Virus record (IMG/VR): IMGVR_UViG_3300043570_001980 | Location: 62,001 to 126,000 of that record | Length of the DNA stretch: 64,000 nt | Direction: 5' to 3' (one strand) | Shown here: piece after piece, positions 58,838 to 64,000 of the stretch | Position numbering within the stretch: position 1 is the stretch's first letter | How the letters are laid out: every line of letters begins with the position of its first letter | Notes under the pieces: generated by a model | The model's database searches: none | The model's input: the letters and a program-made list of their open reading frames with translations, nothing else | Told to the model about the DNA's origin: nothing | Translations under genes and position numbers: made by a program

Positions 58838-60753
<1,916 letters not shown>

Positions 60754-60756
60754 TCT

Positions 60757-60784
60757 AAAAGCCCGGACATTGTCCGGGCTTTTT
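60757..60784. terminator. Rho-independent (bidirectional) terminator after groEL
   Basis: AAAAGCCCGGAC-ATT-GTCCGGGCTTTT. Confidence 0.88.
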
Positions 60785-60794
60785 AACAAGAGTT

Positions 60795-60880
60795 ATTGAT
60801 TTTTTCTATTGTCGTTATTAAAACAATTTCAAGAAAAATCCATAAATCTGCTTGATTATATAGATATATAATATTATAAT
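60795..60880 (+). promoter_or_regulatory. OxyR-like site plus sigma70 promoter of ahpC
   Basis: ATTG-N7-CTAT-N7-ATTA at 60795; TTGATT-17 nt-TATAAT at 60852-60880. Confidence 0.5.
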
Positions 60881-60928
60881 AAACACTCAGTACAAACACT
60901 GAGTAACATTTTAACAAAGGAAAATAAC

Positions 60929-61489
60929 ATGAAAACAGTTGGCGATAAATTAACCCCATTTGCAGTAACAGGTGTCAAGCCAGGACAACCAGAAGATGCC
61001 TTCTATACAATTACAGAAAAATCATTTGAAGGCAAGTGGAAAGTAATTGTTTACTATCCAAAGGACTTTACATTTGTATGCCCTACAGAAATTGTAGCAT
61101 ATGACAAATTAGCAGGTGACTTTGCCGAGCGTGATGCAGTTTTACTCACAGGCTCGACAGACAACGAGTTCTGTAAGGTAGCATGGCAAAAGTCACACGA
61201 TGACTTGCGCAAGATTATACATCACCAGTTTGCTGATACTGCTCGTCACCAACCTGGCGAAGAACGTGGCGGTGTAAGTCTTATTGAGCAGTTGGGCGTG
61301 TTCTATGCTCCAGCAGGTGCCGCACTTCGTGCCACATTCATCGTTGACCCAGACAACGTTATCCAGCACGTTACTGTGAACAACTTGAATGTTGGTCGTA
61401 GCCCAGAAGAAACTCTGCGTGTGTTGGATGCGTTACAGACTGGCGAACTATGTGCCTGTAACCGTACCGTTGGCGGCGAGACACTATAA
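60929..61489 (+). CDS. ahpC: Peroxiredoxin AhpC
   Basis: YYPKDFTFVCPTE, GELCACN. Confidence 0.95.
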   Translation: MKTVGDKLTPFAVTGVKPGQPEDAFYTITEKSFEGKWKVIVYYPKDFTFVCPTEIVAYDKLAGDFAERDAVLLTGSTDNEFCKVAWQKSHDDLRKIIHHQFADTARHQPGEERGGVSLIEQLGVFYAPAGAALRATFIVDPDNVIQHVTVNNLNVGRSPEETLRVLDALQTGELCACNRTVGGETL

Positions 61490-61995
61490 TGGCATTTATT
61501 GACGCAATTAAAACTGCGTTGCCAGACTACGCCAAGGACACCAAGTTAAACCTTGATGCTGTTCTTGTGCGTAGCACATTGGATGCTGATGTGGCCATGG
61601 GTTGTGCTGTGGCCGCACTCGCCGCAACTGGTAACGGAAAGGTATTAGCTGTTATGTTAGCGGATCAACCAGTACATGCTGAATCAGCAATGACCGCCGC
61701 TTCAATTATGGCACAGAACAATGTATGGTATCCCTACGTTGAGATGGCTGACGATCCTGCTCTTAAAGGATTGCCAGCACAGTTACGCATGAATGCCATT
61801 GCCAGTCACGGTGGAACTACCAAGTCAAACTTTGAGGCATTTAGTTTAGCCGCAAGTATTGTGGGCAAGTGCCACTTCTGTGTGAAAGCGCACTACGAAA
61901 CACTCAAGCAAGAAGGATACACAGTAGAGCAATTACGTGATATTGGCCGTATTGCCAGTGTTATGAATTCGGTGGCCAAAGTTCTGAACAGCTAA
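61489..61995 (+). CDS. ahpD: Alkyl hydroperoxide reductase AhpD
   Basis: LPDYAKDTKLNL, MAQNNVWY, SIVGKCHFCVKAH. Confidence 0.93.
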   Translation: MAFIDAIKTALPDYAKDTKLNLDAVLVRSTLDADVAMGCAVAALAATGNGKVLAVMLADQPVHAESAMTAASIMAQNNVWYPYVEMADDPALKGLPAQLRMNAIASHGGTTKSNFEAFSLAASIVGKCHFCVKAHYETLKQEGYTVEQLRDIGRIASVMNSVAKVLNS

Positions 61996-63083
61996 TGCAC
62001 AAAAAACATCAAGTCATCAGATGTGAAGCATATATCTTTCAAGGAGATACTTTTTCCGTTGAACAGGCTGAAAATTTTCTTAAAGAGTACGACACAGACT
62101 GTGATACTATTTTAGCTAGTGTGTGGGAAGTACCTTATTATAAAATGTCTACTAACTGGAGACAAGGGTATAAAAACCTAGTACAAACAGCAAAAAGAAA
62201 ATTAAAAGGAAGAATTTTTGTTATACTTGATTCCTGGTATCAACCATATTACCAAGACTTGTTAGATCCAGCTGTTGATGATGTTTTGTTAATTGATTAT
62301 TTCTTGGTTAGAATCTATAACGAAGTTGTAGTTAAAAAACTATGCGATTTTAAAAAAATACCCGATGTAAAAAATCCATTTTTATTCTTAACTGGCAAAC
62401 CATCTAAACTCAACAGAACTCGATTGTTATATAAGTTACAACAGAAGAATTTGTTAGAAAACAGCATATGGTCGTTTTATCCAATTAAAGATAAAATTAA
62501 TCAAGAACATTCAACTGTGCCTGAAATAACAGTTGACGAATACATTGATTTTACAAACAAATATCAACGTCAACCAGATAGTGTTAAATTTAAACCGTCT
62601 GGCCACTCTTATTTTTTTCTTCCGGTACCTTACGACGTTAAACTTTATGATAGTACAGGTTTTTCAATTGTACCCGAAACTATATTTAATAATACAAATT
62701 CGTTTGATACTGTTTTTTTCACAGAAAAAACCTGGATTCCAATATTAAATAATCATGCTTTTATAATTGCTGGAATTCCTGGTGTACTCAAACAACTATC
62801 AACTATGGGGTTCAAAACCTTTGAAGAATATTTGCCAGTTAAATATGACAACATACTTAACCACGAACAACGATTAAATGCAATTGTTGAAAACGTGGAA
62901 TTTTTAGTTAATAACATCGATGCCCTAGAGAATGATTTAATTAACGATATCAAACACAATCATCAAAATTTAATAAAATTAGCTTGCAATAATGTTGATA
63001 ATATTCTCAATCTTGCCAAACAGCATCAATGGCAAATTAAACAGTTTGACGACCTAGTTAACACCGCTGATAAAATTCTATAA
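61995..63083 (+). CDS. Hypothetical protein, glycosyltransferase-like
   Basis: FLFLTGK...R, IVPET, FTEKTW, LSTMGFKTF pattern; AT-rich. Confidence 0.55.
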   Translation: MHKKHQVIRCEAYIFQGDTFSVEQAENFLKEYDTDCDTILASVWEVPYYKMSTNWRQGYKNLVQTAKRKLKGRIFVILDSWYQPYYQDLLDPAVDDVLLIDYFLVRIYNEVVVKKLCDFKKIPDVKNPFLFLTGKPSKLNRTRLLYKLQQKNLLENSIWSFYPIKDKINQEHSTVPEITVDEYIDFTNKYQRQPDSVKFKPSGHSYFFLPVPYDVKLYDSTGFSIVPETIFNNTNSFDTVFFTEKTWIPILNNHAFIIAGIPGVLKQLSTMGFKTFEEYLPVKYDNILNHEQRLNAIVENVEFLVNNIDALENDLINDIKHNHQNLIKLACNNVDNILNLAKQHQWQIKQFDDLVNTADKIL

Positions 63084-63114
63084 CAATTACAGATTATGGA
63101 TATATAATAGTACT

Positions 63115-63219
63115 ATGAACTATCAATCATTGTCCATGTACACCAAGTGTGACGCACGAGATTTCGTGAGTTACAACTATGAGCACATGTGCAATGCGGG
63201 TCTTGGGAAATCTAGATAA
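63115..63219 (+). CDS. Putative leader peptide (34 aa; not in ORF track)
   Basis: MNYQSLSMYTKCDARDFVSYNYEHMCNAGLGKSR; ATG 7 nt after TATAAT (63103). Confidence 0.45.
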   Translation: MNYQSLSMYTKCDARDFVSYNYEHMCNAGLGKSR

Positions 63220-63238
63220 CTAGAAAGTACTGCTAATA

Positions 63239-63269
63239 AAGACCCGCCAACTAGGCGGGTTTTCTTTTT
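63239..63269 (+). terminator. Rho-independent terminator with an overlapping antiterminator option
   Basis: AAGACCCGCC-AACTA-GGCGGGTTTT-CTTTTT; the 5' arm also pairs with GCGGGTCTT at 63196. Confidence 0.8.
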
Positions 63270-63367
63270 GTAGGTAGACCAGAATTGACAGATCTAGTAC
63301 AATAGAAACATGAAGGAAGCAATTCCGGGCAACAACAGAGTGTTGTAAAAATACAACAAACAAGTAG

Positions 63368-63434
63368 TTGACAAAAATTGCAAAGTATCATATAATTGAT
63401 GCATACGTTGAGAAATCAACAATGTTCTTTAACA
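63368..63434 (+). promoter_or_regulatory. Sigma70 consensus promoter followed by a boxB-like hairpin and rrn-type boxA
   Basis: TTGACA-17 nt-TATAAT; GTTGA-GAAA-TCAAC; TGTTCTTTAACA at 63423. Confidence 0.75.
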
Positions 63435-63487
63435 ATGTTAGAGTTTTTGTATAGTAGCCCGCAAGGGTTGCTATATTAAAATGTATT

Positions 63488-63668
63488 AAAGGTTACCTAC
63501 ACCGTTAGGGATCTACAGCGAGGACAGTGGGGCCGCCCACGCTCAAACTAGGTCTATGAAACCGGGCAGAAATGTCCAGAAAAGCGGCGGAGCATGTAGG
63601 CAGTAATGACCGTGCAGGCCTATACAAGACGGTTGTATAGGTAGACATAGATGCACAATGGTTCCTTT
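63488..63668 (+). ncRNA. Candidate multi-helix structured RNA upstream of tRNAs
   Basis: CCTACA/TGTAGG, GTGGG/CCCAC, GGGCA-GAAA-TGTCC, GTGCA/TGCAC, CCTATACAA/TTGTATAGG, AAAGG/CCTTT. Confidence 0.55.
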
Positions 63669-63693
63669 AGTATTTTTTAATATAGTAAATTTT

Positions 63694-63783
63694 GGAGCGG
63701 TGGCCGAACGGTAAGGCAGCGGATTGCTAATCCGTACAACGTGTTAAAGCGTTGACTGGGTTCGACTCCCAGTCGCTCCGCCA
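63694..63783 (+). tRNA. tRNA-Ser(GCT)
   Basis: GGAGCGG/TCGCTCC, loop TTGCTAA, long variable arm, GCCA end. Confidence 0.93.
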
Positions 63784-63789
63784 AGTTTT

Positions 63790-63854
63790 GAGAGTCACAT
63801 CGCCTGGATACTTCCTTTGGTAACAAAGCACTAGGTCCTGCAACCGTGGCTCTC
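63790..63854 (+). ncRNA. Candidate small structured RNA between tRNA genes
   Basis: GAGAGTCAC/GTGGCTCTC, CCTGG/CTAGG, CTTTG-GTAA-CAAAG. Confidence 0.45.
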
Positions 63855-63862
63855 CCTTATTT

Positions 63863-63937
63863 GCTCGATTCGTCTATCGGTTAGGACATGCGGTTTTCAT
63901 CCGCATAAGAGCGGTTCGACTCCGCTATCGAGTACCA
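63863..63937 (+). tRNA. tRNA-Glu(TTC)
   Basis: GCTCGAT/ATCGAGT, TGCGG-TTTTCAT-CCGCA, TTCGA, CCA. Confidence 0.93.
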
Positions 63938-63942
63938 GACAT

Positions 63943-64000
63943 GGAGATGTGGCCGAGTGGCTGAAGGCGGCAGACTGTAAATCTGTTCTGTAAAAAGCGC
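63943..64000 (+). tRNA. tRNA-Tyr(GTA), truncated by the window end
   Basis: GGAGATGTGGCCGAGTGG D-arm; GCAGA-CTGTAAA-TCTGT. Confidence 0.85.

What the first reader, a model, noticed from the sequence alone, without database searches (positions are those of the whole stretch)
63488..63668. ~180-nt multi-helix RNA heading the tRNA array
Seen: closing AAAGG/CCTTT; domain 1 closed by CCTACA(63496)/TGTAGG(63595) with GTGGG-GCCG-CCCAC and GGGCA-GAAA-TGTCC hairpins, and a possible loop pseudoknot GCCG with CGGC(63585); domain 2 GTGCA/TGCAC with a perfect 9-bp CCTATACAA/TTGTATAGG. No ORF. Known: large phage ncRNAs such as GOLLD and ROOL sit among tRNA genes. Inference: an unknown ncRNA class, possibly a tRNA-processing or decoy RNA.
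Basis: partly seen in the sequence, partly recalled or inferred. Interest (0 to 1): 0.65.

Follow-up and report, generated by a model that had tools for sequence, protein, structure and literature searches.

The report
New structured RNA of jumbo phages
The stretch is a real gene for a roughly 185-base folded RNA of a family not yet described, found in about a hundred freshwater giant-phage sequences; its shape is strongly conserved but its job is still unknown.

Summary
Folding energy alone is not significant (z = -1.0), but comparative evidence is decisive. A covariance model found 97 distinct homologues, 35 in viral contigs and 70 in metagenome contigs. About 94% of cells are paired, against about 40% when partners are slid. 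Both-sided changes occur in 34-37 of 50 pairs. No Rfam 15 family matches. No homologue was found in isolated phages, and an exact-pattern scan of 185,579 prokaryote species genomes gave only chance hits.

In this window the RNA follows a perfect sigma-70 promoter and a leader with a hairpin and an rrn-type boxA. A closing duplex of about 24 bp encloses it, and tRNA-Ser starts 25 nt after the core. Most relatives are stand-alone genes with their own promoter, so the tRNA array is not essential.

Best reading: a stable, trans-acting phage RNA cut out by RNase III and RNase P, working through an almost invariant core. The target is unknown.

The parts
63368..63396 (+). Sigma-70 promoter TTGACA-17 nt-TATAAT (12 of 12), start of the tRNA-array transcript
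   Evidence: Equivalent consensus promoters precede the RNA in relatives; 43 of 64 metagenome copies have one within 130 nt.
63408..63421 (+). 5'-proximal hairpin GTTGA-GAAA-TCAAC (boxB-like position)
   Evidence: Relatives have CTAGTTA-GAAA-TTAACTAG or GTTAAGCAATTAAC at the same place, so the hairpin is kept with a different sequence.
63423..63435 (+). boxA-like element TGTTCTTTAACAA, 12 of 13 identical to E. coli rrnH boxA
   Evidence: PMC2724277 Table 1 gives rrn boxA as ugcucuuua. YGTTCTTTAA is kept in the promoter-bearing array-type leaders even where the rest differs. It is the only match in the 64-kb window, with 0.84 expected by chance.
63454..63471 (+). Hairpin GTAGCCC-GCAA-GGGTTGC upstream of the core
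   Evidence: G-U to A-U and U-G to U-A changes in L007. Present in array-type relatives only.
63468..63492 (+).
   Evidence: It pairs with 63664-63688. Relatives have equally long helices of quite different sequence.
63496..63506 (+). 5' strands of P2 (CCTACA) and P2b (CCGTT), part of the nearly invariant core
   Evidence: Both-sided changes occur only in L134 copy 1 (CCUAGA/UCUAGG, CCACU/GGUGG) and L069 (CCCACA/UGUGGG).
63509..63555 (+). Variable arm P3-P3a-P3b with loop L3b GCCG (63532-63535)
   Evidence: every pair of P3a and P3b, and 6 of 7 pairs of P3, change on both sides.
63556..63563 (+). Conserved junction ATGAAACC (family consensus CAUGAARYNRG)
   Evidence: Alignments.
63564..63577 (+). 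P4 hairpin GGGCA-GAAA-TGTCC with a mostly GNRA-type tetraloop; expanded by insertions in some relatives
   Evidence: Common loops are GAAA, GUAA, GAGA, GCAA, GUGA and GCGA. L007 carries an 18-nt insertion that still forms a hairpin.
63578..63611 (+). Conserved 3' half of the core: junction AGAAAAGC, P2b 3' strand GGCGG, bulge AGCA, P2 3' strand TGTAGG, junction CAGTAATGACC
   Evidence: GCGGCGGA and GTRATGA are kept in almost all members. Two U-G wobbles are near-invariant (UG in 35 and 30 of 35 sequences), which identifies the + strand as the RNA.
63612..63656 (+). Domain 2: P5 (GTGCA/TGCAC), P5a (9 bp), loop L5a GACGG (63628-63632), junction TAGACATAGA
   Evidence: A second architecture of this domain occurs in 14 of 97 distinct members.
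63664..63688 (+). 3' strand of the closing helix; candidate RNase III site
63694..63783 (+). tRNA-Ser(GCU), first tRNA of the array; its RNase P site would set the downstream limit of the RNA's precursor
   Evidence: 56 bits. In relatives the first tRNA is Asp, Ser, Glu or Leu, 13-25 nt after the model match.

Best explanation
The region is a gene for a stable, compactly folded non-coding RNA of a new family restricted, as far as searched, to uncultivated freshwater jumbo phages.

How it is made here. Host sigma-70 RNA polymerase starts at the consensus promoter (63368-96). It transcribes a short leader carrying a hairpin and an rrn-type boxA. That leader probably recruits the host Nus antitermination factors so that the long untranslated tRNA array is read through. 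Next comes the RNA, then more than 20 tRNAs.

How it is released. The 5' and 3' flanks form a closing duplex of about 24 bp, built like the leader-trailer helix around 16S rRNA. Host RNase III would cut this duplex, and RNase P cuts at the tRNA-Ser 5' end. The product would be about 185-200 nt.

Its shape. It is a three-way junction. Domain 1 holds P2/P2b, a variable P3 arm and a GNRA hairpin P4. Domain 2 holds P5/P5a. A short contact between loop L3b and loop L5a ties the two domains together.

How it acts. The nearly invariant P2/P2b strands and junctions are the working surface. The RNA most likely acts in trans by binding a conserved partner, a host or phage protein or RNA, rather than by regulating the genes next to it.

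Shown: the family, the secondary structure, the strand, the contexts and the absence of known homologues. Inferred: the processing enzymes, trans action, Nus recruitment and the partner.
For: Structure. There are 35 distinct viral and 70 distinct metagenome homologues, with 94.6% and 93.8% of cells paired against 36-46% when partners are slid. Both-sided changes occur in 34 and 37 of 50 pairs, and 0 of 500 shuffles reach any measure. The window, L007 and L010 alone already show compensatory changes.

Strand. Two U-G pairs in P2b are near-invariant.

Independent gene. Most copies have their own TTGACA-17-TATAAT promoter about 10 nt before the closing helix. Another promoter follows at once. 41 of 64 copies have no tRNA within 400 nt.

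Closing duplex. It has at least 17 pairs and dG of -17 kcal/mol or lower in 27 of 33 viral members, with unrelated sequences: TATTAAAATGTA... here and CAGTTAGAAAAGAG... elsewhere.

Leader. boxA is 12/13 identical to E. coli rrnH (PMC2724277) and is kept in the promoter-bearing array-type leaders.

Loop contact. CG:CG is present in nearly all members and is compensated in three lineages: GGCA/GAUGC, GAUG/GACAG and CGCAG/UUGCG.

Expression. Two freshwater metatranscriptome studies hold 65-104-nt contigs on 63602-63666 carrying relatives' variants. A third study holds 63519-63560.

One copy per genome in three large records. No conserved ORF.
Against: No transcript ends, abundance or processing sites were measured. 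Only assembled contigs of RNA libraries could be laid. These may contain DNA, and they match relatives rather than this phage.

RNase III cleavage is inferred only from helix length. The phage genomes encode no RNase III of their own, so a host enzyme must be assumed, and the host is unknown.

The boxA match alone is no rarer than chance in 64 kb (expected 0.84).

No partner was identified. There is no complementarity to E. coli rRNAs above shuffles and no conserved RNA-related neighbour gene.

The loop contact rests on two pairs and three lineages. A third pair is not supported.
Confidence: 0.55

Rival explanations
1. It is a cis-acting leader of the tRNA array. The folded RNA would help processing of the precursor or make RNA polymerase termination-resistant (put-like), and it would have no life of its own after cleavage.
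For: In this window and about 20 relatives it lies 13-25 nt upstream of a tRNA, behind the array promoter and a boxA-like leader.
Against: Most family members have no tRNA within 400 nt, have their own promoter and are followed at once by another promoter. Some copies lie inside arrays with 5-8 tRNAs upstream. The boxA element, not the RNA, is what tracks the promoter-bearing array leaders: it is absent from most stand-alone copies.
Confidence: 0.13
2. It is a self-assembling RNA. The L3b and L5a loops pair between molecules rather than within one, giving rings or cages as in phi29 pRNA or the ROOL and GOLLD assemblies (own knowledge).
For: There are two hairpin loops with complementary dinucleotides that co-vary in three lineages. 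A long 5'/3' helix and a three-way junction recall pRNA. The genomic company of phage tRNAs recalls ROOL and GOLLD.
Against: Only two base pairs are supported. Whether the contact is within or between molecules cannot be told from sequence. No Rfam match to pRNA, ROOL or GOLLD.
Confidence: 0.1
3. It is a ribozyme, either self-cleaving or acting on tRNA precursors.
For: It has an invariant core with variable peripheral helices, a tertiary loop contact and a GNRA loop. These are typical of catalytic or ligand-binding RNAs. It is close to tRNAs in a subfamily.
Against: There is no match to any ribozyme family, including RNase P types, at E up to 10. There is no covariation-supported P4-like pseudoknot. 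Stand-alone copies have no obvious substrate nearby.
Confidence: 0.08
4. It is a riboswitch or other ligand or protein sensor controlling the gene downstream.
For: It has an aptamer-like conserved junction core. Several stand-alone copies are 17-85 nt upstream of a same-strand ORF.
Against: The downstream elements are heterogeneous: tRNAs of four kinds and unrelated small ORFs. Neighbour genes that recur among loci lie at varying distances or upstream of the RNA. A fresh promoter often lies between the RNA and the next gene, and in L033, L018 and L056 it overlaps the RNA's 3' end. No terminator or SD-sequestering platform was seen.
Confidence: 0.06
5. It is a chance set of inverted repeats or a conserved DNA-level site with no RNA function.
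For: The single-sequence folding energy is not significant (z = -1.0). The minus strand folds almost as well.
Against: Covariation is massive and helix-specific in two independent sequence sets. Near-invariant G-U wobbles are strand-specific. Indels add or remove whole base pairs or whole hairpins.
Confidence: 0.02

Closest known systems
Phage T4 stable RNAs rnaC and rnaD (species 1 and 2)
   Same: They are small stable RNAs of unknown function encoded in a phage tRNA cluster on the tRNA strand, directly adjoining a tRNA, so presumably made from the same precursor.
   Different: No sequence or structure similarity: the best model score over the T4 tRNA region is under 7 bits. The T4 RNAs are 139 and 119 nt and lie at the 3' end of the cluster. 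This family has a long closing duplex and is more often a stand-alone gene.
rrn operon architecture (boxB-boxA-boxC leader plus the leader-trailer RNase III helix around 16S rRNA; PMC10250234, PMC2724277)
   Same: The order is the same: strong promoter, hairpin, boxA (12/13 identical), then a structured RNA enclosed by a long duplex of its flanks, then tRNAs.
   Different: The enclosed RNA is about 185 nt and unrelated to rRNA (no Rfam rRNA hit). Nus binding and RNase III cutting are inferred, not shown. Most stand-alone family members lack the boxA leader.
GOLLD and ROOL large phage-associated ncRNAs
   Different: They are 3-4 times larger. Their Rfam models do not match here, so there is no homology.
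phi29 pRNA
   Same: Similar size, a 5'/3' helix, a three-way junction and two loops with co-varying complementarity.
   Different: No Rfam match. pRNA belongs to small phi29-like podoviruses with a dedicated packaging motor (own knowledge). The loop pairing here is only 2 bp and may be within one molecule.
Candidate structured RNAs catalogued from IMG/VR (PMC10690425)
   Same: That survey drew on the same data source and reports 8,495 unnamed candidate motifs. One of them (DNAVirus_1850) has 27 instances and occasionally overlaps a tRNA-Asp call.
   Different: The catalogue's tables were not available. Whether this family is among them is unknown. No function, leader, closing helix or loop contact is described there.

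Membership tests
Any Rfam 15 family (including RNase P types, tmRNA, 6S, SRP, YrlA, pRNA, GOLLD, ROOL, riboswitches, self-cleaving ribozymes) | Covariance-model score at or near the family's gathering threshold | tested here: not met
   Nothing overlaps the core 63488-63668 at E up to 10. Nothing overlaps the RNA in ten other family members.
T4 rnaC / rnaD | Sequence and structure homology | tested here: not met
   Model R1 with filters off on the T4 tRNA region gives a best score of 6.7 bits, and 3.7 bits over rnaD.
T4 rnaC / rnaD | Location in a phage tRNA cluster, same strand, adjoining a tRNA | tested here: met
   This is true for this window and a subfamily only.
Retron msr/msd RNA | Terminal inverted repeats (a1/a2) enclosing stem-loops | tested here: met
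   Closing helix of about 24 bp.
Retron msr/msd RNA | Reverse transcriptase encoded next to it | tested here: not met
   No RVT_1 match anywhere in G000-G003, two of which are 95-99% complete. The neighbours are tRNAs or small ORFs.
Bacterial Y RNA (YrlA-like) | Ro/TROVE protein partner encoded, and a tRNA-like module | tested here: not met
   No TROVE domain in G000-G003. No YrlA model hit on the RNA.
rrn-type antitermination leader (applies to 63408-63435, not to the core RNA) | boxA consensus downstream of the promoter, preceded by a hairpin | tested here: met
   TGTTCTTTAACAA against E. coli rrnH TGCTCTTTAACAA (PMC2724277). The hairpin lies at 63408-21. Both are conserved in the promoter-bearing array-type leaders. 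A lone match is expected by chance 0.84 times per window, so the weight comes from position and conservation.
rrn-type antitermination leader | Binding of NusB/NusE and read-through of terminators | not testable with these tools
   Needs biochemistry or reporter assays.
RNase III processing stem | Near-perfect duplex of about two helical turns formed by the 5' and 3' flanks | tested here: met
   27 of 33 viral members, and 24-29 pairs in the window's subgroup.
RNase III processing stem | Staggered cleavage in the duplex | not testable with these tools
   No raw reads with ends were available (one search gave contigs only).
Riboswitch | Constant position in the 5' UTR of a coherent gene set, with an expression platform | tested here: not met
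   Downstream elements are heterogeneous, and a new promoter often intervenes.

The most novel reading that the evidence does not exclude
The RNA is a new kind of small phage effector RNA whose invariant core binds a universally conserved host machine (tRNA, ribosome, RNA polymerase or an RNA-targeting defence protein). It may also self-assemble through its L3b-L5a loops into a ring, as a miniature counterpart of pRNA, ROOL or GOLLD. That would give a tractable 185-nt model for why large phages carry orphan structured RNAs beside their tRNAs.
Probability: 0.15. Interest if true: 0.85.

Novelty: new variant of a known kind. Interest (0 to 1): 0.62.

Why it matters
Large phages often carry orphan structured RNAs in or near their tRNA islands: T4 rnaC and rnaD for fifty years, and more recently GOLLD and ROOL. 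None has an assigned function.

This family is small enough for chemical probing, crystallography or cryo-EM. It is widespread: more than 120 metagenome contigs, with the scan stopped at its limit. It has a sharply defined invariant core that should make partner hunting straightforward.

The locus also suggests that a phage has copied the rrn operon design (boxA leader plus a flank-to-flank processing helix) to express a long untranslated tRNA array. This is a testable idea about how such arrays escape Rho-dependent termination.

Tried and rejected
1. Rfam at gathering and at E up to 10 on the window, the contig end and 19 relatives' loci: only tRNAs, and one tmRNA in a relative.
2. blastn (distant mode) of 63300-64000 against 50,697 isolated-phage records: only tRNA hits. 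Vibrio phage 2.275.O, whose GroEL is 60% identical, has no copy by model R1.
3. An exact-pattern scan of 185,579 species genomes gave four hits. All are chance matches inside protein-coding DNA of GC-rich MAGs, and none matches the model.
4. The partner stays invariant while the loop becomes GACG, GGCA or GAUG.
5. A third base pair in the loop contact is not supported.
6. An all-against-all column search for further pseudoknots gave only G/U noise outside the nested helices.
7. Retron, Y RNA and phage RNase III ideas: no RT, TROVE or RNase III genes.
8. A short ORF (AUG at 63557 to UAA at 63605) is broken by indels in relatives. There is no conserved frame on either strand.
9. Complementarity of the conserved strands to E. 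coli 16S, 23S and 5S rRNA is no better than shuffles.
10. Conserved neighbour proteins (GP88, an AAA ATPase, GIY-YIG, DUF6552 and unknowns) say nothing about RNA function.
11. The supplementary tables of PMC10690425 are not held.
12. Metatranscriptome contigs give presence only. They show no ends or strand.

Full report
WHERE THE WINDOW LIES. The window is bases 62692-126691 of a 128,804-base IMG/VR virus record judged 35% complete. Near-identical and 86-87% identical relatives are 342-kb and 345-kb contigs. This is therefore a jumbo phage of about 340 kb. Just upstream of the finding lie a GroEL chaperonin (59134-60753), an AhpC-like peroxiredoxin, a CMD/AhpD-like protein and a 362-aa protein without any family. 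Sequencing runs that hold parts of the stretch are mostly freshwater, lake and river metagenomes or metatranscriptomes.

THE OBSERVATION. The tRNA array is real. tRNA-Ser(GCU) starts at 63694 and tRNA-Glu at 63863. Thirteen tRNAs follow to the contig end, and there are 22 in the array of the complete relative (25 in the locus L004).

The thermodynamic fold of the single sequence is not better than chance: -53.3 kcal/mol against a mean of -48.9 for shuffles, z = -1.0. The opposite strand folds nearly as well. The case therefore rests on comparison with relatives.

HOMOLOGUES AND COVARIATION.
- Two relatives at about 87% identity already show compensatory changes. CAA/UUG becomes CGA/UCG in the 9-bp hairpin. 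GAUCUA/UAGGUC becomes GACUGUA/UACAGUC, with a whole extra pair. GAG/CUC becomes GCG/CGC. An 18-nt insertion lengthens the GAAA hairpin into a longer hairpin.
- I built covariance model R1 from these three sequences.
- I fetched more loci with patterns made of conserved junctions. In viral contigs R1 matched 39 loci, 35 of them distinct. There 94.6% of cells are standard pairs, against 38-44% when the 3' partners are slid. Both-sided changes occur in 34 of 50 pairs, and no shuffle in 500 reaches any measure.
The 78 loci searched gave 75 matches, 70 of them distinct. The same figures hold there: 93.8% paired, 37 of 50 pairs, slid controls 39-42%.
- The union is 97 distinct sequences.
- Two tandem U-G wobbles in P2b are near-invariant. 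The RNA is therefore read from the + strand, the strand of the tRNAs.
- No reading frame is conserved.

ANATOMY IN WINDOW COORDINATES.
- Closing helix: 63468-92 with 63664-88.
- P2: 63496-501 with 63595-600.
- P2b: 63502-06 with 63586-90.
- Variable arm: P3 63509-15 with 63549-55; P3a 63520-22 with 63542-44; P3b 63527-31 with 63536-40; loop L3b GCCG at 63532-35.
- Junction AUGAAACC: 63556-63.
- P4: 63564-77, a hairpin with a mostly GNRA-type loop.
- Junction AGAAAAGC: 63578-85.
- Junction CAGUAAUGACC: 63601-11.
- P5: 63612-16 with 63652-56.
- P5a: 63619-27 with 63633-41, with loop L5a GACGG at 63628-32.
- Junction UAGACAUAGA: 63642-51.

The peripheral helices vary freely. P2, P2b and the junctions are almost invariant. 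Only a divergent second copy (L134 copy 1: CCUAGA/UCUAGG and CCACU/GGUGG) and one lineage (L069: CCCACA/UGUGGG) show that P2 and P2b are helices at all. Domain 2 has a second architecture in 14 of the 97 sequences, but keeps the hairpin with the GACGG loop.

TERTIARY CONTACT.
It fails because L3b is GACG in about half of the family, GGCA in one lineage and GAUG in another. The proposed partner GCGGCGG never changes.
- Instead, the central CG of L3b can pair with the CG of L5a.
- When L3b is GGCA, L5a is GAUGC (L056, L060, L069, L070, L116).
- When L3b is GAUG, L5a is GACAG (L059).
- In L132 both loops are replaced together, by a large loop with two CGCAG copies and a loop UUGCG.
- These are three independent compensations. 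A third flanking pair is not supported.
- I treat this contact as likely. Sequence cannot say whether it forms within one molecule or between molecules.

THE LONG CLOSING HELIX. RNAalifold and duplex folding extend AAAGG/CCUUU to about 24 pairs here. In 27 of 33 viral members the flanks form at least 17 pairs with dG of -17 kcal/mol or lower. The sequences are unrelated between subgroups. The window's subgroup has AU-rich TATTAAAATGTA... In the stand-alone subgroup CAGTTAGAAAAGAG pairs with TTCTTTTCTAACTG. A near-perfect duplex of two helical turns made by the 5' and 3' flanks is the design of RNase III processing stems, such as the leader-trailer helix around 16S rRNA (PMC10250234). No RNase III gene is present in these phage genomes. 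A host enzyme is therefore assumed, and cleavage itself is inferred.

THE LEADER IN THIS WINDOW.
- A 12-of-12 sigma-70 promoter lies at 63368-96.
- It is followed by the hairpin GUUGA-GAAA-UCAAC (63408-21).
- Next comes UGUUCUUUAACAA (63423-35). E. coli rrnH has UGCUCUUUAACAA at the same kind of place, read directly from the genome. PMC2724277 lists rrn boxA as ugcucuuua.
- The ten-base core occurs once in the window, where 0.84 matches are expected by chance, so alone it proves nothing.
- However, YGUUCUUUAA recurs after a hairpin in the promoter-bearing array-type leaders, including those whose other leader sequence differs, such as L044. L054 carries a one-base variant.
- I infer that the phage uses the host Nus antitermination system to carry RNA polymerase through several kilobases of untranslated tRNA genes. 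This belongs to the array, not to the RNA: most stand-alone copies lack boxA.

CONTEXT ACROSS THE FAMILY.
- In this window and about 20 viral relatives, the RNA ends 13-25 nt before a tRNA (Asp, Ser, Glu or Leu).
- Some copies have 5-8 tRNAs upstream as well.
- In the metagenome set, 41 of 64 copies with enough flank have no tRNA within 400 nt, and 43 of 64 have a consensus promoter within 130 nt upstream.
- In stand-alone loci the promoter ends about 10 nt before the closing helix, and a new promoter follows immediately.
- In L033, L018 and L056 the P5 3' strand reads TTGACA and serves as the -35 box of the next gene.
- The neighbouring genes are small ORFs, a GP88-family protein, an AAA ATPase and a GIY-YIG protein. 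None is RNA-related.
- There is one copy per genome in three large records. One short contig carries two diverged copies 650 nt apart.
- The RNA is thus a self-standing gene that, in one subfamily, has been placed at the head of the tRNA array.

EXPRESSION. Only assembled contigs of older RNA libraries could be laid.
- Two freshwater metatranscriptome studies hold contigs of 65-104 nt on 63602-63666. They carry the G63632T and T63634C variants seen in relatives.
- A third study holds 63519-63560.
- Nothing lies on 63100-63500, but that part is poorly conserved among relatives, so it is a weak control.
- This fits transcription of the family in nature. It does not show a discrete transcript.

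WHAT IT IS NOT.
- No Rfam 15 family matches.
- It is not T4 rnaC or rnaD.
- It is not a retron, because there is no reverse transcriptase.
- It is not a Y RNA, because there is no TROVE protein and no YrlA hit.
- No isolated phage has it by blastn.
- An exact-pattern scan found no copy in 185,579 prokaryote species genomes; the four hits were chance matches in coding DNA.
- Its conserved strands are not unusually complementary to E. coli rRNAs.
- It may be among the 8,495 unnamed candidates of an IMG/VR survey (PMC10690425), but that could not be checked.

MECHANISM AND CONFIDENCE.
- I am about 95% confident that this is a real, conserved, structured RNA gene.
- I give about 55% to the fuller reading: a stable RNA released by RNase III and RNase P that acts in trans through its invariant core on a conserved partner.
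- The arguments for trans action are the independent promoters, the heterogeneous neighbours, and a core held constant while the rest of the molecule and the phages diverge.
- Rivals: a cis leader of the array (0.13), a self-assembling RNA (0.10), a ribozyme (0.08), a riboswitch (0.06) and chance (0.02).

NOVELTY AND INTEREST. The kind is known: orphan structured RNAs of large phages, often beside tRNAs. This family is new to Rfam and to the isolated-phage record. It has its own features: the closing duplex, the invariant core, the loop contact, and an rrn-like operon design in one subfamily. The function is unknown, which limits the score. The family's size, abundance and clean anatomy make it a good experimental entry point.

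Noticed in passing
window 63784-63862: The 79-nt spacer between tRNA-Ser and tRNA-Glu is a second conserved structured RNA. A 9-bp closing stem (GAGAGTCAC/GTGGCTCTC) covaries. The internal strands are invariant (ATCGCCTGGATACTTC ... CACTAGGTCCTGCAACC). A variable hairpin has loops GTAA, TTCG, GCAA or GUAA. There are 20 distinct variants in the fetched loci, always one tRNA after the large RNA. ARAGORN and Rfam do not call it. An RNA-library contig covers 63786-63856.
   Followed up: partly
L024 3150-3572 (minus strand), relative IMGVR_UViG_3300031857_000002: A phage-encoded two-piece (permuted) tmRNA scores 104 bits against RF04321. It lies about 1.4 kb upstream of that phage's copy of the RNA. 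This may hint at a host with a permuted tmRNA.
   Followed up: no
L002 1193-1416 (just beyond the window end, in the 446-nt gap after tRNA-Tyr); also L024 1059-1282 and L025 2095-2336: There are recurrent weak hits (20-23 bits) to positions 36-95 of the permuted-tmRNA model, inside a large gap of the tRNA array. Other large gaps in the array (658 and 115 nt) are also unexplained.
   Followed up: no
L033, L018, L056 (3' end of their RNA copies): In these relatives the P5 helix is GUCAA/UUGAC. The 3' strand TTGACA lies 17 nt before a TATAAT box, so it doubles as the -35 box of the next gene's promoter. The RNA gene and the promoter overlap.
   Followed up: partly
L134 1-182 and 835-1028 (metagenome contig Ga0136642_1050280): Two diverged copies of the RNA lie 650 nt apart, one with each domain-2 architecture. 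Copy 1 is the only member with compensated changes in both P2 and P2b.
   Followed up: partly
window 59134-61995: A phage-encoded GroEL is 69% identical to Salmonella GroL and 60% identical to that of Vibrio jumbo phage 2.275.O. It is followed by an AhpC-like peroxiredoxin and a CMD/AhpD-like protein, an oxidative-stress pair unusual in a phage.
   Followed up: no
window 63080-63263: A promoter-like site (63080-63108), a possible 34-codon ORF (63116-63220) and a strong intrinsic terminator (63239-63263) form a tiny separate unit between the 362-aa gene and the array promoter.
   Followed up: no
L007 7087-9480: In the 87%-identical relative, about 2.2 kb is inserted between the 362-aa gene and the array promoter. 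The promoter, leader and RNA are kept intact.
   Followed up: no
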